Sequence record: MH791404.1
Strand: one strand, 5' to 3'
DNA length: 64,000 nt
Part shown: piece after piece, positions 31,876 to 50,106 of the stretch
How positions within the stretch are numbered: position 1 is the first letter of the stretch
Layout: each line of letters starts with the position of its first letter
Translations under genes and position numbers: made by a program
The notes under the pieces: model-generated
Told to the model about the DNA's origin: nothing
What the model saw: the letters and a program-made list of their open reading frames with translations, nothing else
Databases searched by the model: none

Positions 31876-34800
31876 TATTGTTCTACCTTAACTTGGGTAG
31901 GTGGTACTGGCACAAGGAGTTTACTTACATCACGAGGATTGCCTATATCATCCTTAAGCCGTTTTTCTGACAACCGTTTAAGGTCAGAATACCTACTACT
32001 GAAATCGCTAAACAGGGGACTACCATCAAGCCTACGTGCCGATGGGGTATAAACAACACCGTCAACAGTCCAGTTCTGTTCATCTTGGTCATAATTCCTG
32101 ACCTCAAATACATTACCGGTACTTGTATCAATTGCGTTATTCCACTCAGACACATCAAATGGCGTTTGTGGTTGTTCCACTTCCATTAATTCCCCAGTTA
32201 TCGGGTCGAATAGAGGTACTGGATCTGTAAACGAACCATTGGGGTCTGGTACTGTTCTATATTTAGGGGTTAGGCTAGGTAAACCAGAATCCCACCGATA
32301 TGATTTATTTATATCGACGATAGTCTCTATGTGTTTCATAGAAATACCCCCGTTAACCATAACAGTTAGTAGAGTAATACCAACAAATCCAAATCCAACT
32401 GGATGAACAAACCGAATAACATCATCCTTATACCGAGATGTGTTCAATTCAGAACGAATTCTCATCATATAGTAAGATCTGTTTCTGTTTATATAATCTA
32501 TGTCGGAATATGCTAGCTCTTTACCCTTAACTCCCCGAGTAACTTCACCAACAAAAGAACTAGATTCAGATTTTATTTCTTGCCCAACTTCCAACTTCCC
32601 AATAAGGTTATGAATCGTTATTTTCCATCTTAATTGACCATCAACAAACTGACGTTCAATATAGGTAACGTTGGCTCGACCAGTTTTGGTAAATATCGTT
32701 CTTCCAACAAGATCAGTACTGATATTAGACGACTTAACCAGTATATCATAATCTATCCCAACTTGAGATTCGATTTCAATATCTACATCGGCATCATATA
32801 GCAGTTTGAACAAGAACTTATAACTATCCAGAGTTCCCTTTGAGCTATAAAAGTTATTGGCGTTGGCTTCGAAGAATTTAACAACCTCATCTCTCTTGTT
32901 TTGGTCTAGATATATATTTCGTCGTCTCATCTCAGACCACAAAAATACAAAAGAATCTTTCTCTCTCGGGTATTTTAGTTTGATGAAATTGAGAAGTTTA
33001 CCATACATCGAATCAGTACCTTCTGATAGGAATTGAAGATAATATTCAGCAAACTTAGAGTAATTTGAGTCGTTGAAATAATGTTCAGGTCCCATAATTC
33101 TCAACATAGGTGCGATATTTGGATCAATTATACCTGTATCATCCTTCTTCTCTTCAACAACTTCTCTTTCTTGGTTTATCAAAGAAGCTTGCAACGCGAT
33201 ATATTCTGGTCTCCAAAATACAGATGCTTCATCCCTAACACGATAAGGGAACTCATAGTATCCAAATATCTCCCCACCAAGACCATTCTCTCTATTGTAG
33301 GCAGTGTGAATCAAAATACCGTTACAATACTTACTAAAGTTTTTGAAATTGATATTGTTCAGATAAAATTTTACAGAACCTTTATTCCAAACTTCTTTGT
33401 TATATTCCCGTGTAGGGTCTATGTTATATTGGTATTTGGTGGAAGGTGTTATAAGAACTATTCGGTTTTCATGGTTTTTCCAAACCCTCTCCCCAGTCAT
33501 AGCCATATAATCAAACCCAGCCTCGTTATAATATCTAGCTGGTCTTAAGGAGAAAACATCACCATCTTCGGTTTCCCATTGATACATGAAAACTTTCTTT
33601 TCACTAAGATATCCAAAATCGGAACTGTATTTTACCGCATAGGTCACATCATCCGGGTATTTATTAACGGTATCAAGATCTTCGATAGTATTGGTGTATT
33701 TATAAGTTGCACCGGATACAAATAATTTAGTACCATCAACACTCATATCGGAATATTTGTGTTCGATATTATACCGTTCATCCTCAGTATTTCCAAACAC
33801 TCTTTCCCATGACCCACCATCCGGAACAGAAGGCTTTACTATCTGCCCATCTTCTTGGTAAAGGTCAAAAATATTAGGATATGCAAAATCATCAACAAAC
33901 CGACTATATTTCACCGGGTCTACTATCTTTTGTACTGGATCGGAATAGATATCAGCAATAAACTCAAACGAGTCATGGCTATCACTTGGTACAAAGTTGA
34001 CTTTCATTTGCATTCCATGGGTTCTACCTTGGAATACTCTAGATTCCCATCTAGTAGAAACTTTACCAACGTGTGTACCGTCAGGAAGGAAAGTTACCAT
34101 CTCACGACCAACGTCAATACCATTTACAAAATTAATATCTTCTGTTGGGTCGGAGAAATTCATATTTCCCAACATGAAATCTTCTTTCTTGTATTTTTCG
34201 TTGAGGCGATATACACCAGAATATACAGATTTCTTTACGTTTTTCGGATCTCTTTTATCTTTCCCTGCATCTACTTCACCGGATACCAGCGCATAACAAA
34301 CCTCGTTAAGTACATCCATTTTCTTAACTACTACGTTTGGATTATCACAGATCGTAAAGACTTCCGGATCCCATATGATATTACCTTCGCTATCGGTTGG
34401 ACCACCAGATACACGTATACGTCTAGCAACACCATTTGCAGCGGCATATAGCCACATATTAGAGGACGTTTGAGATTCTACTTTTCTTCTGATATCGTCT
34501 GGGTACTTGGCAAAAGTCCCAAAGAACATAGTAGGAAATGGGATAGACGAATCAGTATCCATCTTAACAAATGTAAGCTGATCATCCGACCAAAAATGAA
34601 GGTCTGAGCTAAATCTTACTTCATCAACATTTCGTCCGTAAAAAGCAAAATCATAACCAAGAAGGAAAGATGTATTCCTGTTTTGGCTCATTACGGTATT
34701 ACCGGTTGGATATCCAACGCGATCAGAAATAGCTTGGTAGTAATACCAGTTCTGCCCACCGTCATTAGTTACCTTACAGTAGTTTTGATATTTTTCAAAT

Positions 34801-35378
34801 GCGTATACAACACGACGGTTTGCGCCAAGGTAAACGCTATTAATATCCCGACAAATTTTTGATACAGAACCCAAAATCTCATGGTATTCATCGTCACTAG
34901 TAACAAAATTTTCTATATTCGTGACGTTTGAGATACTAGGATCGTATATAAAGTTTTCATTCATCAAACTAGCCTGAATCACATCACTATTGAGGTTGAT
35001 ATAATCCATCTTGTTTTTATGCAACTTCATATCAATAAACTTAAACGATGGAATGAATTTCTCCATGGTAGTTATTTGATATGCGTTTGTTGTGAATGAT
35101 TCTATTACATCACTAACAACCCAATCAGACGGCTCCAAACCGGGATGAGTTGTAGATATTCTAAATTTATATTTTGTATCTGGAATGAGAGATGAACTGA
35201 AAAATTCGGGGGAATATTCCACCCCCAATTGTGTCCAACTATCTACCCCAGTACCTGAAACGATGGTGTATTCGACAATATAAAAATAGTTCGAACCTAC
35301 ATCATCCCATTTTAGGTGAACGAAGTTCGCGCCGAGCATGGCGACGCGAAGACTTGTTATTGTTGGAGCTTTTATCAT
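31875..35378 (-). CDS. 7: Baseplate wedge initiator gp7
   Basis: MIKAPTITSLRV..L.ANFVHLKWDDVGSNYFY, SKGTLDSYKFLFKLLY, RFVHPVGFGF. Confidence 0.96.
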   Translation of the reverse strand: MIKAPTITSLRVAMLGANFVHLKWDDVGSNYFYIVEYTIVSGTGVDSWTQLGVEYSPEFFSSSLIPDTKYKFRISTTHPGLEPSDWVVSDVIESFTTNAYQITTMEKFIPSFKFIDMKLHKNKMDYINLNSDVIQASLMNENFIYDPSISNVTNIENFVTSDDEYHEILGSVSKICRDINSVYLGANRRVVYAFEKYQNYCKVTNDGGQNWYYYQAISDRVGYPTGNTVMSQNRNTSFLLGYDFAFYGRNVDEVRFSSDLHFWSDDQLTFVKMDTDSSIPFPTMFFGTFAKYPDDIRRKVESQTSSNMWLYAAANGVARRIRVSGGPTDSEGNIIWDPEVFTICDNPNVVVKKMDVLNEVCYALVSGEVDAGKDKRDPKNVKKSVYSGVYRLNEKYKKEDFMLGNMNFSDPTEDINFVNGIDVGREMVTFLPDGTHVGKVSTRWESRVFQGRTHGMQMKVNFVPSDSHDSFEFIADIYSDPVQKIVDPVKYSRFVDDFAYPNIFDLYQEDGQIVKPSVPDGGSWERVFGNTEDERYNIEHKYSDMSVDGTKLFVSGATYKYTNTIEDLDTVNKYPDDVTYAVKYSSDFGYLSEKKVFMYQWETEDGDVFSLRPARYYNEAGFDYMAMTGERVWKNHENRIVLITPSTKYQYNIDPTREYNKEVWNKGSVKFYLNNINFKNFSKYCNGILIHTAYNRENGLGGEIFGYYEFPYRVRDEASVFWRPEYIALQASLINQEREVVEEKKDDTGIIDPNIAPMLRIMGPEHYFNDSNYSKFAEYYLQFLSEGTDSMYGKLLNFIKLKYPREKDSFVFLWSEMRRRNIYLDQNKRDEVVKFFEANANNFYSSKGTLDSYKFLFKLLYDADVDIEIESQVGIDYDILVKSSNISTDLVGRTIFTKTGRANVTYIERQFVDGQLRWKITIHNLIGKLEVGQEIKSESSSFVGEVTRGVKGKELAYSDIDYINRNRSYYMMRIRSELNTSRYKDDVIRFVHPVGFGFVGITLLTVMVNGGISMKHIETIVDINKSYRWDSGLPSLTPKYRTVPDPNGSFTDPVPLFDPITGELMEVEQPQTPFDVSEWNNAIDTSTGNVFEVRNYDQDEQNWTVDGVVYTPSARRLDGSPLFSDFSSRYSDLKRLSEKRLKDDIGNPRDVSKLLVPVPPTQVKVEQ

Positions 35379-35380
35379 TT

Positions 35381-37336
35381 TTAAATTACCACCGAGTTCA
35401 TTTCAATTGTTGTGTATTGAGGACGTAGGTTATTCTCAAAAACGATCAATGTACCATCTGACGGGAATATATTAAGTGAAGTTGGTTCACTATGTAATTC
35501 AATATATGCCGCAATAAACTGATCTGGATCTTTATTGAGAACGCCAAGGTCGAATGTGATTTGGTCTATTTCATAATTTATAGATCCAACTACATAGTAT
35601 TTACTGCGCCCATCAATTTCTTTCCTATCAAAGTCGCTTCCGGTATATTCTTGAACACCAGATATATGACCAGCAGCAAAGGGTCCAACCAACATCAACC
35701 CAGTATTTTCGCTGTGTACCCCAGACGGATCAGGAATATCGTTCTTCTTAGTACCAACATAATGAACATCATAACTTGTTGTTGTGTTATGGATATATTT
35801 TATTTCGGTGCTATAGATAGAGCCTTCAACTAGGTCGTTATTGTACTGAATACCATTCATCGGACTAACTAGATAGTTGTCTATTTCTCGAACAAGTCCA
35901 ATTTTTGTTTCAGTACCAAGAATAGACACATCAGTATTATCAATACGACTGTTCATTTTGGATGTATAGAAACCAGCGTTGAAGATTTCAACCTCTTCCG
36001 TATAATAACGGTCTATGGAATTCAAGATCTGACCTTGTAACCATTCTTCTGTTTGTGGGAGTTGGTTTATTGCGTAGGTAACCTTGGCATTGGTTTTCAC
36101 ATACATATAATTTGGACTATGAACAACCGGCGTAATCGTACTAACGTTAAACGGTCTCAGATAGTTTTGGATGTCTTCTTTCTGCACAGTAGTCAGATAT
36201 AAACCATCTTGAGGCTTTATCGCAATGAATGCATAACCCGGCTTTTCTGGGTTGGTATAACACTGGATAGCCTGAACGATATTTCCAAATCGACTAGATA
36301 TGAAAGTTTCGTAGTCGGAAGCAGTAACACAACGACGCTGTGTCTCTCTCATTACCGGACCTAGTGAACGAATACGTTCTATATCCTCAACTTCACCACC
36401 ACCAATAGATCCGACATAATTCACATCGTTGATTCCGTCAGGATGAGTTGGGTTTTCTCTAATCTCTTCAACAACCAAGTTAGGAATTGTATCCACATAA
36501 TCAAAACCACGAGAACCATTAGCGGCGGTTCCTTTGGTGCTTATATATTCCAAAACGATGGTATCCCCTACAGAAGGCTTTAAACCACCAACGTAGTTAC
36601 TGCGGAGCATACCGTTAGTATCAACGGTAGAGTCGCCTTCCCCGAAATATATTTCAGTGAAACTATCAATTGTTTCTCGTTGATAAAAAACAGTCGAAGT
36701 ACCACCAACACGAACAATCGGTTTATTAGACCAGTCTTCCCATTTAGCCCCATTCACATAAACGTTAACATATCTACGGTCAATATTTGGATCCTGAATT
36801 ACAATAGTTCCATCCTGTCCAAACGTCATTTGGTTTCTGATAATTCTACCTTGAACCAAGTTAAGATCGGTAATATATCGTTTATCTATACCACGTATTA
36901 CCTCAACGTCTTCCCAAGTGACATAATCATAAAATTCAACTTCTTCAATAGAAGCAGTAAATTTAGTACCCTTCGGAATTGTAATAGAACGAGGACTACT
37001 ATCAATCGGGCTATAATACGCTTGGATCTGTATCATATTAGTACTAGCACTCATACCCCAAGGCATATATCCATTATCTTGTGCGTGTTGAACCACAGAA
37101 GAACGAAGGCGGGCAGTTTGGTTGTACCCTTCAAATAAAGCCCCGTTCGCAAATTGCTGATGATACAGCATAGCATAAGCCATAGATTCGATTAGAACAG
37201 TCAATCTTGACCCTTCAAAATCATAATCTTTAAATTCATATTGGTTTTTAAAGAAATCCCGTAATCTGGTTTTGAAACCTTCAAAGGTACTCTCTTTGAA
37301 TACGTTTGGGATTTCAACTGAGTTAATATTAGCCAT
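35381..37336 (-). CDS. 6: Baseplate wedge gp6
   Basis: DYDFEGSRL, TARLRSSVVQHAQDNGY, RCVTASDYETF, KPGYAFIAIKP. Confidence 0.97.
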   Translation of the reverse strand: MANINSVEIPNVFKESTFEGFKTRLRDFFKNQYEFKDYDFEGSRLTVLIESMAYAMLYHQQFANGALFEGYNQTARLRSSVVQHAQDNGYMPWGMSASTNMIQIQAYYSPIDSSPRSITIPKGTKFTASIEEVEFYDYVTWEDVEVIRGIDKRYITDLNLVQGRIIRNQMTFGQDGTIVIQDPNIDRRYVNVYVNGAKWEDWSNKPIVRVGGTSTVFYQRETIDSFTEIYFGEGDSTVDTNGMLRSNYVGGLKPSVGDTIVLEYISTKGTAANGSRGFDYVDTIPNLVVEEIRENPTHPDGINDVNYVGSIGGGEVEDIERIRSLGPVMRETQRRCVTASDYETFISSRFGNIVQAIQCYTNPEKPGYAFIAIKPQDGLYLTTVQKEDIQNYLRPFNVSTITPVVHSPNYMYVKTNAKVTYAINQLPQTEEWLQGQILNSIDRYYTEEVEIFNAGFYTSKMNSRIDNTDVSILGTETKIGLVREIDNYLVSPMNGIQYNNDLVEGSIYSTEIKYIHNTTTSYDVHYVGTKKNDIPDPSGVHSENTGLMLVGPFAAGHISGVQEYTGSDFDRKEIDGRSKYYVVGSINYEIDQITFDLGVLNKDPDQFIAAYIELHSEPTSLNIFPSDGTLIVFENNLRPQYTTIEMNSVVI

Positions 37337-44550: not shown

Positions 44551-45545
44551 TATTCGAAATAACGGAACGTGCAGAGTCCACAACAGAAAAACGCAATAGA
44601 AAACAATGGATTGATGTTGGTGTTGATTATATGAACGCCAAGAAAAAGAACCCAAGTCTTACTGCAAAGAAATATGCAGAGGAAAAAGGGTTGAATTATG
44701 AAACATTCAGTAGAGCTATGCGCAGACACAGAGAAGAAATAAAGACTTATTATTCTCTGATAAACCCAAATAAGAATAAACAACAATGGATTGAGCTTGG
44801 TGTTGATTATTTGACACAAAAAGAAAAGAGTAGCATTACTCTAAAAAATTATATTGAAGGACGTGGACTTAATAAAGAAACCACGGAACGGGCATTCAGA
44901 AGATTCAAGCAAGATATTCTACTGGCTAAGAANTTAAAAGANGCNCAAATAAGCGGAAGAAAACTATCTAAAGCCGAAAAATATCAGATGNTNTTGGCTG
45001 ACTTTAGAAATAAAGTAAGNCAACACGAAAAAGAGCCTGTNAAGTCTCAGAAGAAGTCNACGGAATGGTTTAACAATTTCATAAAGAAAAACGTTCGTGG
45101 NCACCAAGTAACAAGACCAATTGCTGGTCGATTGTATACTTTCGCATATGACGCAAAACATAAGGCAACACTACCATACTGGGATAAATTCCCCCTGATC
45201 GTATATCTTGGCCTAAGTGCAAAACACAAAGGTTTGATGTTGGGTCTCAACCTTCACTACATCCCGATCAAAGCCCGTAAAGAATTTATGGAAGAGTTGC
45301 TGAAACATGCAACCACAGAGAGGATTACCAACCGTACATCCCTAAATATCAACTGGGGTAAGGTTAAGGGAATGAGAGGTGCAGACCATATGATCAAAGC
45401 GTATTTGCCGGGTCATATTAAGGGTCCATTAATGGAGATTAAACCGCAGGATTGGAGTTCTGTTATTAATCTACCGACTCAACGGTTTGTATCTGGTGTT
45501 CCTCCGAAGACCTATAATACGAATTCCGTTTGGAGATCATACTAA
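44547..45545 (+). CDS. 2: DNA end protector gp2 with duplicated N-terminal helical module
   Basis: [33 protein letters not shown]; scattered N bases. Confidence 0.95.
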
Positions 45546-46501
45546 TGAACTTAATACCACCTATTCCAACCATAGATACGTTGCAAAATGCGTTTGACCG
45601 GACACTTGAGTCCGGTCTTAATTCACTAACAAATTTATCAATAGATGCATCAGATGAGATCCCCGATCTAACTAGGTTTATGCGGAAAGTTGAGAATACC
45701 GATTTGGCTAGACCAAACATGTTTATTGTAAGGTTCGGAGATTTCCGAACCTCTATATTCAGTGATGGTGTTTTTGATAGGGATTTACCGATATTTCCGG
45801 ACTCAAGCAGCGGGATGGACGTCAATGATAGTCTTTTCTCTGGTACAAGTTATGCTTGGCATAGAGTTCAGGACATTGCTTTGGGACAAGCACACAAAAT
45901 CCTCACGCCTAGCATGAAGAAGATTTTTGGTGCTTGGGATCCGTCCTTGATCCGGATCATACCGGGAGCAGGAGAGATCCTTGATGGATTTCTGGGAACC
46001 GATTATGATGTAAACCGCGATCTTGCACTTATGGTAAAAAGCGTCGGACTCCCTAGTTCTACTTTGGAAACGACAATCAACCGTACAGACAAACTACCTC
46101 GACACGAAGTAAGAGGTAGAAACTACGGAACCATGAGTATGACGTTTTACTGTTCCCCTTCTTATGAGGAACGTTCTTTGATGTTAACATGGCAGAATAC
46201 AATTGTCAACCCAAGAAATGGACAATTTGGATTTTATAATACGTATGCAAAGGATATTGACGTCATCACGTTAGACCGTCATGGAGTTAAGCAATCCACT
46301 GTACATAATACAGGGTGCTTTCCCATAGAGGTAGGTGAAGTTCAACTAGATTTTGAGAACAATTCTCAGGTAGCAACCTTTACCGTCACATTCGCTGTAT
46401 CAACTACAGTGCATGTTCCTACTAAGGGTGAAGAGAACACCATCGACTCTATAGAGAGTATCATAAGACGTACTACAGGCGTTGTGAAAGCCATTCGTTA
46501 A
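45545..46501 (+). CDS. 54: Baseplate tail-tube initiator gp54
   Basis: DLARPNMF, LMVKSVGLP, W.N.IV.P.NG, LDRHG, LDFENNSQVATFTVTFA; TAATG-coupled to gene 2. Confidence 0.88.
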   Translation: MNLIPPIPTIDTLQNAFDRTLESGLNSLTNLSIDASDEIPDLTRFMRKVENTDLARPNMFIVRFGDFRTSIFSDGVFDRDLPIFPDSSSGMDVNDSLFSGTSYAWHRVQDIALGQAHKILTPSMKKIFGAWDPSLIRIIPGAGEILDGFLGTDYDVNRDLALMVKSVGLPSSTLETTINRTDKLPRHEVRGRNYGTMSMTFYCSPSYEERSLMLTWQNTIVNPRNGQFGFYNTYAKDIDVITLDRHGVKQSTVHNTGCFPIEVGEVQLDFENNSQVATFTVTFAVSTTVHVPTKGEENTIDSIESIIRRTTGVVKAIR

Positions 46502-46506
46502 TACTA

Positions 46507-46530
46507 AGCCATCCTACGGGGTGGCTTTTT
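46507..46530 (+). terminator. Terminator after gene 54
   Basis: AGCCATCC-TACG-GGGTGGCT-TTTT; identical to 3920. Confidence 0.85.
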
Positions 46531-46539
46531 CATATCTAC

Positions 46540-46660
46540 AGATCTCGAACGTAGTGAGACGGCGTAGCCGCCTGTTCGCTTCGCTCACACTCTTTCTAAT
46601 TATAGATTTTCTATATAAATACTTATAGAGACTTTATAGTTTGATTGCAAGTGAAACTAT
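46540..46660 (-). repeat. 121-bp dispersed repeat, copy B (inverted relative to copy A)
   Basis: Reverse complement of 4312-4432 with 3 mismatches. Confidence 0.95.
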
Positions 46661-46733: not shown

Positions 46734-47519
46734 ATGACAAACAAAACCACAATTGACAAGAGTGTACTTCTTGCTGCTATGCAGAAAAACGTACAGCAGA
46801 CCAATGTAACTTTATCAGATGGTAGAAAGATCAAGGTTCGTGCTTTCTTGATGAAAGAAATGAAACTGTTGATGTTAGCTAACGAAGCCAATACTGGAAT
46901 CGATGATGCAATCATCCAAATCGTAAAAAACTGTATCCTAACTGATAATGTTGATGTAGACCTTTTACCTGTGTTTGACTTGGAAGCAGTTTATCTAGCT
47001 TTGTATAAGTTATCAAAAGCAAGTCCTACTGTTCCGGTTATGTTTACTTGCGCCAACGAAATTCTTGATGAAGATGGTAATGTTCAATATGACCAATATG
47101 GTGAAATTATTCGTTGTGGCTCTGATATCAAAGTAAACGTAAACTTGAATAACGCTAAATTGTCGGATGCACCAGATAACAAAATTGTTCTGAATGAGAA
47201 CATGACAGTTTATATGAGATATCCTAATATCAGCGAGGTTGAATATTTCAACGTAGAAGTTGAGTCCGACTTGTTTAACTTAATCAATCGCTGTATTGAC
47301 GAAGTTCATATGGGAGATCAGGTTGTTAAGGTTGGTGTTGATATTCCGTATGAGGATATTTCTGAAATTATGGAATACGCCGATTCAGTTGCTTTGACCA
47401 AAATGGGTAAATTTGTAACATCCCTCCCCCAACATACTCTAAATATACCTGTAAAGTGTAAAAAATGTGGACACCAAGAAATTGTTACACTTAAAGGGGT
47501 AGAAAGTTTTTTCGCATAA
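46734..47519 (+). CDS. 26: Baseplate hub assembly protein gp26
   Basis: KVRAFLMKE, NC, MRYP, CID, PVKCKKCGH...LKGVESFF, compared with T4 gp26 PIKCPECG...RGLKEFF. Confidence 0.88.
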   Translation: MTNKTTIDKSVLLAAMQKNVQQTNVTLSDGRKIKVRAFLMKEMKLLMLANEANTGIDDAIIQIVKNCILTDNVDVDLLPVFDLEAVYLALYKLSKASPTVPVMFTCANEILDEDGNVQYDQYGEIIRCGSDIKVNVNLNNAKLSDAPDNKIVLNENMTVYMRYPNISEVEYFNVEVESDLFNLINRCIDEVHMGDQVVKVGVDIPYEDISEIMEYADSVALTKMGKFVTSLPQHTLNIPVKCKKCGHQEIVTLKGVESFFA

Positions 47520-47683
47520 CGCTTGTTAACCATACCATATACGATCATTTTAATACGGTATATAAGCTTAGAAAAGATGGATGGAGCCATTCGGATCTTG
47601 AGGATATGACCCCCTTTGAATTTGGTGTTTATGTTCACCTCTACCTAAACGATCTCAAAGAACAGGCGAGAGAAAAGGACTAA
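47507..47683 (+). CDS. -1-frame extension of gp26 (gp51 C-terminus-like), likely via programmed frameshift
   Basis: T TTT TTC at 47507-47513; -1 frame open to TAA 47681 (FRITLVNHTIYDHFNTVYKLRKDGWSHSDLEDMTPFEFGVYVHLYLNDLKEQAREKD) with no usable early start codon. Confidence 0.7.
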   Translation, partial: FFRITLVNHTIYDHFNTVYKLRKDGWSHSDLEDMTPFEFGVYVHLYLNDLKEQAREKD

Positions 47684-47686
47684 GTG

Positions 47687-49552
47687 ATGATTGACAAGCA
47701 GAAACAGAACGAACTTGATAAATCGGTTCGAGATGTCACGGATGCTATGGATATTGTTTCTGATTCGATGCTTAAGTTGGACGACAAGACAGAAAAGTTG
47801 TCCAACTCAACAAAAGACCTTACCGCGTCTTATGATATTACCTCTGATTCCAGTCTGGAAGTCGCACAAGAACAAGAAAAATTAGCGAACCAGATAAAAG
47901 GTGCCAGAAAGGATAATAAGCGTAGTAATAAGGTTGAAAACGAATTAGTTTCAGCTAGACGAAAGCAACTGGAAGACATTTTAAATAATAAACAACCCCT
48001 AGTGGATTATAGCCAAGGTGTAAAAAGTCAGAACCCGGAACAGGGGGAAACTGCCAAACCTATGCAGGAAGACACTAGGGAGACTTTGAAAGAATTTATA
48101 CAACGCGAAGTTGGTGATCGTCGTGAATTTGTGGAAAATTTCAAAGAAGAAAATCAAAAAACTGGTAAATTTGTTCGAGAGATAGCAAAAAAAGCTAATA
48201 TAGTTGATCGAATGAAGAAATCAGAAACATCAGCAACAGCGAAAATACTTGGTCATACTATGTCCGCTGGTATCGGTATGGTTACTGGAACCATAAACGA
48301 TTTGTTATCAACTATTCCCGGTTATAATCAGGCCGCTAATGCAACGAAGTTTGTTGGTGGGTCTATTATTGATGCACATAACGCACGTAAGGAAAAGAAA
48401 TTAGATGCAAAAGCGAATGCGGCTTATGAAGAGAAGAAGGCTGATGCTACTTCTAGATTCCAACAGATCCCACAAAACAAACCAGAAGACAAAGTAAAAA
48501 CAGATAGAAATAACCAAGAGCAAAAGAAAGAAAGACAAGAAAATGGAAGAGAACGAGAGAACAACGAAAAGCGTCATAAAAGCTTAATCGATGTTCTTAA
48601 AGGTATCCAGATGTCCATGTTGATCGGTAAACTGATTGGTGGTGTTGGATTTGTTCTTAGTGGTCTTGTTTCTGGTATCAGTGTTCTATCTGGTGCGGTT
48701 CTTGGTTTGGCCCCTATGATTGCGGGTGCCCTATCTGCTGCTGTTGGTGGTTTAATTGCTAAGTTTTCGGGGTTGTTTGATAAGATACCGGGATTGGGAA
48801 GTAAGACCCCTACACCATCGTCTGGTTCTGGTGGTGTTAATCCAAACGATGTGTCTAAGGATCCTAAGAAGTCTCCGAAAACTACACAACCGGATGGAAA
48901 GAAGCCACCTACACCAGAACCAAGACCGGGGCAACCAGCAAAAATTGAGACACCTAAAACAAAGACACCTACCCCTAAAGGGAAGGCTGGTATTTTGTCA
49001 AGGGCTGCTGATCTTGGTAAAAAGGGTTGGTCTGTTGCTACCGATGCTGCAAAATCAGCCTCAAAATTTATACCAAAAAGCGCATTAACTGGTGCCGGTA
49101 TGGCGGTACGTGTCGCCGGTAGAGCAATTCCTTTTGTTGGTGCTGGCTTGATGGCTTATGAGTTGTATAACTTCGCCAAAGAGAATCCAGATCTGTTGGA
49201 TAAGGGTGTTGATGCTGCGAAGGGTGCTTGGGAAAGTCTTACCGGGTCATTGTTTGGAAAAGCTAATGCTAGTGAAGCTCAACCGGAATCTAAATTAGGG
49301 AATGAAATTAAGGCGGGTGAAAATGAGCCTGTATTTAAAACCCTTGAGAAAAGAAACCAAGAGGTTGAAGAATTCCGAGCTAAACAACAACGTGAAAAGG
49401 AAGAACGAGATGCACGACGTCAAGAAGGTGCGTTAATGGCTGCTGTAAATAATACCACATATAATAGTATGAATTCCGTTCTACCGTCTGGTTTTGGTGA
49501 ATTTAGACCAGACCAACCACAATATTCATATGGGGTTCAACCGTCAACATGA
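47687..49552 (+). CDS. 29: Tape measure / baseplate hub gp29-like protein
   Basis: About 620 aa, helical and low complexity; GRAIPFVGAGLMAYELY segment; lies between 26 and 3. The call is mainly synteny and composition. Confidence 0.7.
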   Translation: MIDKQKQNELDKSVRDVTDAMDIVSDSMLKLDDKTEKLSNSTKDLTASYDITSDSSLEVAQEQEKLANQIKGARKDNKRSNKVENELVSARRKQLEDILNNKQPLVDYSQGVKSQNPEQGETAKPMQEDTRETLKEFIQREVGDRREFVENFKEENQKTGKFVREIAKKANIVDRMKKSETSATAKILGHTMSAGIGMVTGTINDLLSTIPGYNQAANATKFVGGSIIDAHNARKEKKLDAKANAAYEEKKADATSRFQQIPQNKPEDKVKTDRNNQEQKKERQENGRERENNEKRHKSLIDVLKGIQMSMLIGKLIGGVGFVLSGLVSGISVLSGAVLGLAPMIAGALSAAVGGLIAKFSGLFDKIPGLGSKTPTPSSGSGGVNPNDVSKDPKKSPKTTQPDGKKPPTPEPRPGQPAKIETPKTKTPTPKGKAGILSRAADLGKKGWSVATDAAKSASKFIPKSALTGAGMAVRVAGRAIPFVGAGLMAYELYNFAKENPDLLDKGVDAAKGAWESLTGSLFGKANASEAQPESKLGNEIKAGENEPVFKTLEKRNQEVEEFRAKQQREKEERDARRQEGALMAAVNNTTYNSMNSVLPSGFGEFRPDQPQYSYGVQPST

Positions 49553-50106
49553 TACATAATCAAGCACACATAACAAACATGCGTCTGGAAATCCCAGACG
49601 CAAACACAACCGCCAACTTTGTAACATCAGCTCAATCTGTTGTTCTTCCAACTATGGAAATGGATATAACAAGGGTTTCGATAAATCAGATGACGTCCGG
49701 ACTTATGCCGGGTTCGAAGATCATTTACGAACCATTTAGGATTAGATTTTTGATTGATGAAAATTTCGAATCTTATAAAGAGTTGTATCAATGGATGATC
49801 TCTGTTACTGATAGTAGAACTTTCAATTCCACCGCCCATCTACCGGGTGCTAGACCTAGATCTATTTTGGTTCATATTCTGGATAACTCAAAAAAGAATA
49901 TAGTATTGACTTTCAAGTTTCATGACCCATTCCCGAGTTCATTGGACGATATAGAATTGTCCTATGTTGATGACGGAAACCCAGCCCTTATAGGTAATGT
50001 AACATTTAGTTACTCATCTATGAGTGTTGTTGGTGTAAACGATTTGGAAATCCTACCAAAACAAAACCCGGTCGGTATCGGTGCAGGACACCCATTCCAA
50101 AAGTAA
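49549..50106 (+). CDS. 3: Tail completion / sheath stabiliser gp3
   Basis: NQA..TN..L.IP..NTT.NF...AQSV.LP, YEPF.IRF.IDEN..SY.ELYQWM. Confidence 0.93.
   Translation: MIHNQAHITNMRLEIPDANTTANFVTSAQSVVLPTMEMDITRVSINQMTSGLMPGSKIIYEPFRIRFLIDENFESYKELYQWMISVTDSRTFNSTAHLPGARPRSILVHILDNSKKNIVLTFKFHDPFPSSLDDIELSYVDDGNPALIGNVTFSYSSMSVVGVNDLEILPKQNPVGIGAGHPFQK

What the first reader, a model, noticed from the sequence alone, without database searches (positions are those of the whole stretch)
47492..47686. Programmed -1 frameshift would make gp26 and a gp51-like protein from one gene (G/GT-like tail chaperone pair)
Seen: gene 26 ends GAA AGT TTT TTC GCA TAA, with a canonical X XXY YYZ heptamer (T TTT TTC, 47507-47513) and AGGGG 8 nt upstream of the P-site codon. 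The -1 frame is open for 57 codons (FRITLVNHTIYDHFNTVYKLRKDGWSHSDLEDMTPFEFGVYVHLYLNDLKEQAREKD), has no early start codon and stops 3 nt before the tape-measure ATG. Known: lambda G/GT-type tail chaperones are made by frameshift immediately upstream of the tape-measure gene. T4 gp51, as recalled, is a gp26 paralog ending ...[51 protein letters not shown], which resembles this extension. Inference: a 261-aa gp26 plus an about 316-aa gp26/51 fusion, implying T4's 26/51 pair is a duplicated, frameshift-free G/GT system.
Basis: partly seen in the sequence, partly recalled or inferred. Interest (0 to 1): 0.88.

Follow-up and report, generated by a model that had tools for sequence, protein, structure and literature searches.

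The report
Frameshift site in T4-like tail chaperone gene
This Aeromonas T4-like phage almost certainly makes a short and a long tail/hub assembly chaperone (T4 gp26-like and gp51-like) from one gene, by slipping back one base on a conserved run of T; the site is real and widely conserved, but the idea was already published in 2022.

Summary
The window is Aeromonas phage AS-zj/Assk (Ceceduovirus). Its gp26-like gene (46734-47519) ends with an in-frame T_TTT_TTC heptamer (47507-47513). The -1 frame then stays open to 47683, next to a 622-aa tape-measure-like gene.

The -1 piece is homologous to the C-terminal tail of T4-type gp51. T4 gp51 is itself a gp26 paralog plus that tail.

In 93 related loci (70 non-redundant, median 36% identity) the heptamer and a homologous -1 ORF were always present. 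These loci cover cyanophages, a pelagiphage, and vibrio-, Pseudomonas-, Xanthomonas-, Ralstonia- and Aeromonas phages. Synonymous-site constraint is strong, and an upstream GAGG motif is enriched. The -1 piece has no conserved start codon, and the +1 frame is closed. T4-type phages with a separate gene 51 lack the heptamer. AS-zj has no separate gene 51.

The best explanation is a programmed -1 ribosomal frameshift that gives a short and a long assembly chaperone, analogous to lambda G/GT.

Homology to lambda-type chaperones was not detected. No fusion product has been observed. The core idea is already in the literature (Vladimirov, Gautam and Davidson, Virology 2022), which I could not read. 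[quoted passage not shown] GenBank records still leave the site unannotated.

The parts
45545..46501 (+). gp54-like baseplate-tail tube initiator (tube-family protein), the gene upstream of the chaperone gene
   Evidence: Annotated in Assk and CC2. Hits PF06841 and phrog_45 'tail tube'.
46506..46527 (+). terminator-like hairpin after gp54
   Evidence: Consensus scan only.
46614..46621 (+). TATAAATA, a T4-type late-promoter consensus upstream of the chaperone gene
   Evidence: It is the only + strand copy near the locus. None lies between the gp26-like gene and the 622-aa gene, so the two are probably co-transcribed (inference).
46734..47519 (+). gp26-like gene (short chaperone form, 261 aa; PF12322 T4_baseplate, with four conserved Cys)
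   Evidence: PF12322 at E 2.5e-54, with the match running to the last residue. phrog_150 at E 7e-59. AF2 model with pLDDT 90. It is the only PF12322-like ORF in the whole AS-zj genome.
47495..47499 (+). AGGGG, a weak Shine-Dalgarno-like motif 7 nt before the heptamer
   Evidence: In relatives, GGAGG or GAGGG lies 9-10 nt upstream in 37 of 67 loci. The Glu codon there is GAG in 37 loci and GAA in 15, against a background GAG share of 0.24 (p 5e-13).
47507..47513 (+). slippery heptamer T_TTT_TTC (X_XXY_YYZ), the proposed -1 shift site
   Evidence: Conserved in 93 of 93 frameshift-type loci. Synonymous-site constraint shown. Among the long ORFs of this genome the in-frame heptamer occurs 3 times against 20.7 expected.
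47507..47683 (+). -1 frame extension (58 sense codons from the heptamer, then TAA), homologous to the gp51 C-terminal tail; would be read only after the shift
   Evidence: phrog_634 at E 1.7e-11. Extension HMM at E 9.6e-21, and the T4-type gp51 HMM matches it at positions 199-247 of 249. Substitutions fall 578/313/1280 on codon positions 1/2/3 of the -1 frame. No conserved start codon.
47687..49552 (+). 622-aa gene in the tape-measure (T4 gp29) position; function inferred
   Evidence: Annotated as hypothetical. phrog_11300, unknown function. 68 of 83 relatives have a large ORF starting within -11 to +6 nt of the extension stop. Some of these hit PHROG tape-measure and lysin families. No similarity to T4 gp29 was detectable.
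49549..50106 (+). gp3-like tail completion / sheath stabiliser, the gene downstream of the putative tape measure

Best explanation
One late transcript carries the gp26-like gene, the extension and the 622-aa gene.

Most ribosomes terminate at TAA 47517-47519 and make the 261-aa short chaperone. A minority slip back one base on T_TTT_TTC (47507-47513), with both Phe-tRNAs re-pairing in the -1 frame. In relatives an upstream Shine-Dalgarno-like GAGG/GGAGG probably helps the slip; here that element is a weaker AGGGG.

Ribosomes that slip read 56 more codons and make a protein of about 316 aa. Its added helical tail corresponds to the C-terminal tail of T4 gp51.

The short and long forms would act together as non-structural chaperones for assembly of the hub and tape measure. 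Lambda G/GT plays that role in other long-tailed phages, and gp26 and gp51 do so as two separate genes in T4.

Shown here: the site, its conservation, the coding status of the -1 frame, its homology to the gp51 tail, and the absence of a separate gene 51.

Inferred: that the shift happens on the ribosome, how efficient it is, and the chaperone function. The function is taken from T4 genetics as summarised in PMC3004832.
For: **The site and its conservation**
- The heptamer and open -1 frame are in the window.
- They are in 93 of 93 related loci that lack a separate gene 51. These span Kyanoviridae (cyanophages and the pelagiphage Mosig), three Straboviridae lineages (Ceceduovirus, Chrysonvirus, Schizotequatrovirus), Chakrabartyvirus, Otagovirus, a Xanthomonas phage and a Ralstonia phage.
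- The loci were retrieved with N-terminal peptide patterns, so the C-terminal site did not bias the sample.

**The heptamer, not the stop, is the junction**
- In several loci a -1 frame stop abuts the T run.
- In Mosig the zero frame runs 8 codons past the heptamer.

**Synonymous-site constraint**
- X is T in 70 of 70 loci, and the first Phe codon is TTT in 70 of 70.
- Z is C in 52 of 70, against a background TTC share of 0.33 (p 2e-15).
- GAG is enriched 9-10 nt upstream (p 5e-13).

**The -1 piece is coding and gp51-like**
- Third-position substitutions dominate.
- It has no conserved start codon.
- It is homologous to gp51 tails.
- hhalign of gp51 against window-type gp26 stops exactly at the junction.

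**Controls**
- 12 of 12 T4-type loci with a separate gene 51 lack any in-frame heptamer.
- The whole AS-zj genome has only one PF12322 gene and one tail-like piece.

**Ribosomal rather than transcriptional slippage**
- T6 runs in the slippery phase are depleted about 7-fold in AS-zj long ORFs (3 against 20.7 expected). Other phases are depleted about 2-fold.
- The run is T6 in 58 of 70 loci, although a synonymous TTT would lengthen it.

**Literature**
- Cyanophage and vibriophage 'gp51' is only about 20% of normal length (PMC3037559).
- gp26 and gp51 are listed as hub assembly chaperones (PMC3004832).
- T4-like tail chaperone genes with polyT sites are reported (ref. 76 of PMC12846349).
Against: - No protein, ribosome-profiling or transcript data were available, so the long product and its abundance are unobserved.
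- No conserved downstream RNA structure was found (mean z -0.88 against -0.56 for control segments).
- In the window itself the upstream motif is only AGGGG.
[quoted passage not shown] I could not read it.
- The 622-aa gene has no detectable similarity to T4 gp29.
- In Ralstonia phage RSP15 the pair is not followed by a tape-measure-like gene.
Confidence: 0.8

Rival explanations
1. Transcriptional slippage. RNA polymerase adds one U in the T6-T8 run in a fraction of transcripts. Standard translation of those transcripts then gives the same long protein.
For: The site is a homopolymeric T run, which is a weak rU:dA hybrid. The run is extended by the conserved T of the preceding codon. T6 runs in all phases are about 2-fold depleted in AS-zj genes. 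The title of the 2022 paper favours a non-translational mechanism, but I do not know whether it means this one.
Against: The run is only T6 in 58 of 70 loci, and C follows it far more often than codon usage predicts, although a synonymous T would lengthen the run. X is T in 70 of 70 loci, which fixes the run in the X_XXY_YYZ phase. No locus reaches T6 as TTT TTT without that T. An SD-like GAGG is enriched 9-10 nt upstream, and it has no role in transcription. Twenty T6 runs in other phases are tolerated inside AS-zj genes, whereas the slippery phase is 7-fold depleted.
Confidence: 0.1
2. Separate small protein. The extension is translated on its own as a 25-60 aa 'gp51', as many GenBank records annotate it. 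Translation would start by coupling or re-initiation at an internal or non-canonical start codon.
For: Records for phiAS5, Syn19, Sf-CH3, Mosig, RSP15 and pf16 annotate 40-59 aa ORFs there. In RSP15 an ATG overlaps the gp26 stop. A search of 1.84 billion representative proteins returned only short called ORFs as relatives of the extension.
Against: The first ATG lies anywhere from codon 4 to codon 36 of the -1 piece, and no start is conserved. Amino-acid conservation begins at the heptamer, upstream of most annotated starts. In the window the first start would give only 25 aa and drop half of the conserved columns. This model does not explain the constraint on the heptamer and on the wobble T before it. 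In T4-type gp51 the tail is covalently joined to a gp26-like domain.
Confidence: 0.06
3. No function. The open -1 frame is a decaying remnant of a former gene 51, or a chance ORF, and only the 261-aa protein is made.
For: It is unannotated in AS-zj, Assk and CC2. One chromosomal gp26 homologue in A. salmonicida lacks both the heptamer and the extension.
Against: It is conserved in 93 loci at 25-80% protein identity. Substitutions show purifying selection in the -1 frame (578/313/1280 on codon positions 1/2/3). The +1 frame is always closed quickly.
Confidence: 0.02

Closest known systems
T4 gp26 and gp51 (hub assembly chaperones; PF12322 family), assigned as the tail assembly chaperones of T4-like phages by Vladimirov, Gautam and Davidson, Virology 2022
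   Same: The window ORF is a member of PF12322. Its -1 extension matches the gp51 tail. The short and long forms correspond to gp26 and gp51. Citing papers report polyT sites in the short-form genes of T4-like phages, and a two-gene solution in some T4-like phages.
   Different: In T4 the two proteins come from two diverged, divergently transcribed genes with no slippery site. Here one gene must supply both. This phage's records do not annotate the long form.
Lambda G/GT tail assembly chaperones (Xu, Hendrix and Duda 2004), and their myovirus counterparts such as P2 E/E' (the P2 example is from my own knowledge)
   Same: A -1 shift near the 3' end of a small gene lying between the tube gene and the tape-measure gene. 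Two products share an N-terminus. The role is non-structural assembly. A long form in small amount is expected.
   Different: There is no Pfam, PDB-sequence or robust fold similarity. The short form is larger (about 240-260 aa) and has four conserved Cys. The extension is short (55-70 aa, helical). The heptamer is T_TTT_TTC rather than lambda's G_GGA_AAG (the lambda heptamer is from my own knowledge).
E. coli dnaX -1 frameshift (heptamer with an upstream Shine-Dalgarno-like stimulator; from my own knowledge)
   Same: An in-frame X_XXY_YYZ heptamer with an SD-like element about 10 nt upstream.
   Different: dnaX also uses a strong downstream hairpin, and none is conserved here. In dnaX the shift truncates the product, whereas here it extends it.

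Membership tests
Programmed -1 ribosomal frameshift site (tandem slippage) | In-frame X_XXY_YYZ heptamer in the overlap of the two frames | tested here: met
   T_TTT_TTC lies at 47507-47513. The -1 frame opens only 4 codons upstream of it.
Programmed -1 ribosomal frameshift site (tandem slippage) | Heptamer conserved among relatives beyond what the protein sequence requires | tested here: met
   93 of 93 loci have it. X is T and the first Phe codon is TTT in 70 of 70; on the first 67 loci the log10 probabilities are -13.1 and -10.8. It is absent in 12 of 12 two-gene phages.
Programmed -1 ribosomal frameshift site (tandem slippage) | -1 ORF is coding and conserved, and has no start of its own | tested here: met
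   Substitutions fall 578/313/1280 on codon positions 1/2/3. The first ATG is scattered between codons 4 and 36.
Programmed -1 ribosomal frameshift site (tandem slippage) | Stimulatory element (upstream SD-like motif or downstream RNA structure) | tested here: inconclusive
   Upstream GAGG/GGAGG is enriched in relatives (p 5e-13), but the window has only AGGGG. No conserved downstream structure was found.
Programmed -1 ribosomal frameshift site (tandem slippage) | Trans-frame protein observed, with the shift made on the ribosome rather than in the transcript | not testable with these tools
   Needs proteomics, ribosome profiling and RNA sequencing of infected cells. Indirect phase-specific avoidance favours the ribosome.
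Lambda G/GT-type tail assembly chaperone pair | Gene lies between a tube-family gene and the tape-measure gene | tested here: inconclusive
   Upstream is gp54, a tube-family protein. Downstream is a 622-aa gene followed by gp3. Its tape-measure identity rests on synteny, size and PHROG tape-measure hits in some relatives. It has no similarity to T4 gp29. RSP15 breaks the synteny.
Lambda G/GT-type tail assembly chaperone pair | Sequence or fold homology to known tail assembly chaperone families | tested here: not met
   No chaperone family hit in Pfam or by PDB sequence search. For the window model, Foldseek gave only a weak hit to the HK97 chaperone 2ob9 (E 0.75, prob 0.51). The T4-type gp51 model did not reproduce it.
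Lambda G/GT-type tail assembly chaperone pair | Non-structural proteins that bind the tape measure and tube during assembly | not testable with these tools
   For T4, gp51 is required for assembly but absent from the particle, and gp26 and gp51 are listed as hub assembly chaperones (PMC3004832). Nothing is known for this phage.
T4 gp26/gp51 family (PF12322 T4_baseplate) | PF12322 domain | tested here: met
   E 2.5e-54, residues 25-261. hhalign against the gp51 profile gives probability 97.5%.
T4 gp26/gp51 family (PF12322 T4_baseplate) | gp51-type C-terminal helical tail | tested here: met
   It is present, but in the -1 frame: phrog_634 at E 1.7e-11, and gp51 HMM positions 199-247. In the T4-type gp51 model, residues 196-249 (the last turns of the PF12322 domain plus the tail) form four short helices at pLDDT 90 or above. 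Pfam PF28602, which co-occurs on gp51, is not in the local Pfam copy and was not tested.
T4 gp26/gp51 family (PF12322 T4_baseplate) | Separate full-length gene 51 in one frame | tested here: not met
   Six-frame HMM search of the whole AS-zj genome finds a single PF12322 ORF and a single tail piece.

The most novel reading that the evidence does not exclude
The shift is translational and SD-stimulated, and it is the ancestral state of the whole T4 superfamily. T4's two-gene arrangement would then be a derived duplication in which each copy kept one product. The family has also spread beyond phages: a gp26 homologue with an intact heptamer and extension sits in a Photobacterium chromosomal contig beside terminase, resolvase and VapE-like genes. 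That placement raises the possibility that satellite-like elements carry their own chaperone pair.
Probability: 0.45. Interest if true: 0.5.

Novelty: already known. Interest (0 to 1): 0.4.

Why it matters
- **A missing piece of T4 biology.** T4-like phages were long the apparent exception to the rule that long-tailed phages make a short and a long tail chaperone by recoding. This site shows that most of them follow the rule.
- **An old puzzle explained.** It accounts for why cyanophage and vibriophage 'gp51' looked about 80% truncated (PMC3037559). It also gives T4 gp26 and gp51 a coherent role.
- **Annotation.** The recoded long form is missing or wrongly annotated as a tiny ORF in every record I opened. 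That includes a 2025 record and the reference genomes of this phage.
- **What remains open.** The assignment itself was published in 2022. What is still unsettled is the mechanism, ribosomal or other. The synonymous-site and phase-avoidance statistics here bear on that question.

Tried and rejected
- **Downstream RNA stimulator.** Folding 60 nt after the heptamer in 66 loci gave a mean z of -0.88, against -0.56 for control segments. I do not claim a structure.
- **Homology to lambda-type chaperones.** Pfam, NCBIfam and PDB sequence and profile searches found nothing. A weak Foldseek hit to the HK97 chaperone 2ob9 was not reproduced with the gp51 model, so I dropped it.
- **Tape-measure identity by sequence.** phmmer with T4 gp29 against 64 downstream proteins, and jackhmmer from the 622-aa protein, showed no link to gp29. 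PDB and Pfam searches were also empty.
- **An in-frame fused close relative.** None appeared among 37 gp26 homologues (all 239-261 aa), nor in a phmmer search of 1.84 billion representatives with the extension.
- **Literature.** Seven early keyword searches missed the prior paper. It surfaced only through the PRFect reference list. The paper itself, the KVP40 genome paper and the T4 genome review are not held.
- **A tool limit.** The first alignment that included the T4 proteins was too diverse for the search for related loci.

Full report
**Origin and anatomy**

The window is 100% identical to Aeromonas phages AS-zj and Assk (Ceceduovirus, Straboviridae). The local gene order on the + strand is:
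- gp4, gp2 and gp54 (a tube-family protein)
- the gp26-like gene at 46734-47519
- an unannotated 164-nt gap
- a 622-aa hypothetical gene at 47687-49552
- gp3
- dNMP kinase

A T4-type late promoter consensus lies at 46614-46621, after a terminator-like hairpin. There is no such promoter between the gp26-like gene and the 622-aa gene.

**The observation**

The gene ends AGT TTT TTC GCA TAA, so T_TTT_TTC at 47507-47513 is in the X_XXY_YYZ phase. The -1 frame has a stop at 47492-47494 and is then open to TAA at 47681-47683. The +1 frame closes after 3 codons. The first ATG of the -1 piece is its 34th codon.

**What the two pieces are**

- The 261-aa protein matches PF12322 (T4_baseplate) at E 2.5e-54, up to its last residue.
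- The 56-aa -1 piece, searched on its own, matches phrog_634 'baseplate hub assembly catalyst' at E 1.7e-11, profile positions 58-112.
- T4 gp26 and T4 gp51 were fetched from a record that tblastn returned. Both match PF12322 over its full length. gp51 carries about 48 further residues that match the same part of phrog_634.
- A profile of 65 T4-type gp51 proteins aligns to a profile of 37 window-type gp26 proteins at probability 97.5% and E 4.9e-12. gp51 residues 7-201 pair with window residues 25-261, so the alignment ends exactly at the window protein's C-terminus.
- An HMM of 64 -1 pieces, run against six-frame translations of the T4 and Proteus phage Pm5461 loci, hits only the gp51 tails. 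The alignment starts at the two Phe codons of the heptamer.

**Comparative test**

N-terminal peptide patterns retrieved 80 IMG/VR loci with 26-48% identity. I added named phages from GenBank and two metagenome or genome contigs. In total I examined 93 loci whose gp26-like gene is not accompanied by a separate gene 51.

What all 93 loci share:
- An in-frame T_TTT_TTN heptamer at the conserved Phe-Phe near the gene's end.
- A -1 ORF of 55-69 further codons wherever the locus was complete.
- A +1 frame that closes quickly.

The groups covered are:
- Kyanoviridae cyanophages and Pelagibacter phage Mosig
- Ceceduovirus, Chrysonvirus and Schizotequatrovirus
- Pseudomonas phages pf16 and Astolliot
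- Xanthomonas phage X1
- Ralstonia phage RSP15

In several loci a -1 frame stop directly abuts the T run. In Mosig the zero frame continues 8 codons past the heptamer. The heptamer, not the stop codon, is therefore the conserved junction.

Statistics on the 70 non-redundant loci (median pairwise identity 36% among the 67 clustered):
- The codon before the heptamer always ends in T, and the first Phe codon is always TTT. Given codon usage in the same genes, and computed on the first 67 loci, the log10 probabilities are -13.1 and -10.8.
- The second codon is TTC in 52 loci, against a background share of 0.33 (p 2e-15).
- The Glu codon five codons upstream is GAG in 37 loci and GAA in 15, against a background GAG share of 0.24 (p 5e-13). 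This creates GAGG or GGAGG 9-10 nt upstream of the heptamer.

The -1 piece is coding:
- In 61 moderately diverged pairs, substitutions fall 578/313/1280 on codon positions 1/2/3.
- It has no conserved start. The first ATG is anywhere from codon 4 to codon 36.

**Controls**

- Twelve T4-type loci with a separate gene 51 encode the same C-terminal motif without any in-frame heptamer. T4 itself uses GAG TTC TTT.
- I searched all 4895 six-frame pieces of the AS-zj genome, piece by piece. There is one PF12322 ORF and one tail-like piece.
- The two best hits of a T4-type gp51 HMM in that whole genome are these two adjacent pieces. They are collinear but lie in two frames.
- The phage therefore has no other source of a gp51-like protein.

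**Ribosome or polymerase?**

No conserved downstream RNA structure was found. Four observations favour the ribosome:
- The fixed X_XXY_YYZ phase.
- The preference for C after a T6 run. The run is T6 in 58 of 70 loci, although a synonymous T would lengthen it.
- The SD-like element upstream.
- Phase-specific avoidance of the motif in AS-zj long ORFs. In-frame T_TTT_TTN occurs 3 times against 20.7 expected, and one of the three is this site. T6 runs in the other two phases occur 11 and 9 times against about 19 expected.

These points are indirect.

**Function**

The pair lies between a tube-family gene and a large gene. In 68 of 83 relatives that large gene starts within a few bases of the extension's stop. 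Some of those downstream genes hit PHROG tape-measure and lysin families. The window's own 622-aa protein has no informative hit and no similarity to T4 gp29, so its tape-measure role is inferred from position and size.

T4 gp26 and gp51 are listed as hub assembly chaperones, and gp51 is absent from the particle (PMC3004832).

AF2 models are confident: pLDDT 90 for the window protein and 92.9 for a T4-type gp51. In the gp51 model, residues 196-249 form four short helices that span the end of the PF12322 domain and the tail. Neither model has a significant PDB neighbour. A weak hit to the HK97 tail chaperone was not reproduced. 'G/GT-like' therefore describes organisation and role, not demonstrated homology.

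**Prior knowledge**

- Sullivan et al. 2010 noted, without explanation, that cyanophage and vibriophage gp51 lack the first 200 or so residues.
- The PRFect paper cites Vladimirov, Gautam and Davidson (Virology 2022;566:9-15). It summarises that some T4-like phages carry one short and one longer fused chaperone gene instead of frameshifting.
- I could not obtain the 2022 paper. [quoted passage not shown]

The locus is nevertheless unannotated or wrongly annotated in every GenBank record I opened, including one from 2025.

**Verdict**

The feature is real and strongly conserved, and it is almost certainly functional. It is best explained as a -1 ribosomal frameshift that yields gp26-like and gp51-like chaperones. 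The kind is already known. What remains of value is the mechanistic evidence and the annotation gap.

Noticed in passing
L114:8001-8920 (Photobacterium damselae contig, 467 kb) and L113:8001-8732 (Aeromonas salmonicida contig, 1.1 Mb): gp26-family genes sit on large bacterial contigs. The Photobacterium copy keeps the heptamer and a 57-codon -1 extension, and lies beside terminase, resolvase and VapE-like genes. The A. salmonicida copy has neither heptamer nor extension, and lies beside CapR and two recombinases. These may be integrated or satellite-like elements.
   Followed up: partly
L089:2438-3351 (Ralstonia phage RSP15): The heptamer and extension are present, but the genes downstream are on the other strand and are not tape-measure-like. 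Adjacency to a tape-measure gene is therefore not universal. An ATG also overlaps the gp26 stop here.
   Followed up: partly
window:44080-44550: The gene annotated as gp4 'head closure' in CC2 matches the TnsA-like endonuclease N-terminal domain (PF08722, E 3.7e-19).
   Followed up: no
window:51369-52382: A 337-aa hypothetical protein has a DnaJ (J-domain) match (PF00226, E 6.9e-9).
   Followed up: no
T4 gp26, L006:3752-4375: T4 gp26 gives a weak hit (E 9e-4) to phrog_1140 'baseplate hub distal subunit' (gp28). This hints that gp28 may be a further distant relative of the gp26/gp51 family.
   Followed up: no
proteins P0038-P0135 (T4-type gp51): The precomputed Pfam list shows PF28602 together with PF12322 on gp51-type proteins. 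That family is absent from the local Pfam copy, so I could not test the window's extension against it.
   Followed up: no
The annotators had seen the tail similarity but attached it to the wrong frame or gene.
   Followed up: no
L101:34411-37103 (AS-zj record 34411-37103): DNA polymerase is annotated as two adjacent CDS that overlap by 4 nt.
   Followed up: no
AS-zj genome (L101-L105 and the window): T6 runs are about 2.5-fold rarer in long ORFs than synonymous shuffling predicts (23 against about 59), and no run is longer than T6.
   Followed up: partly
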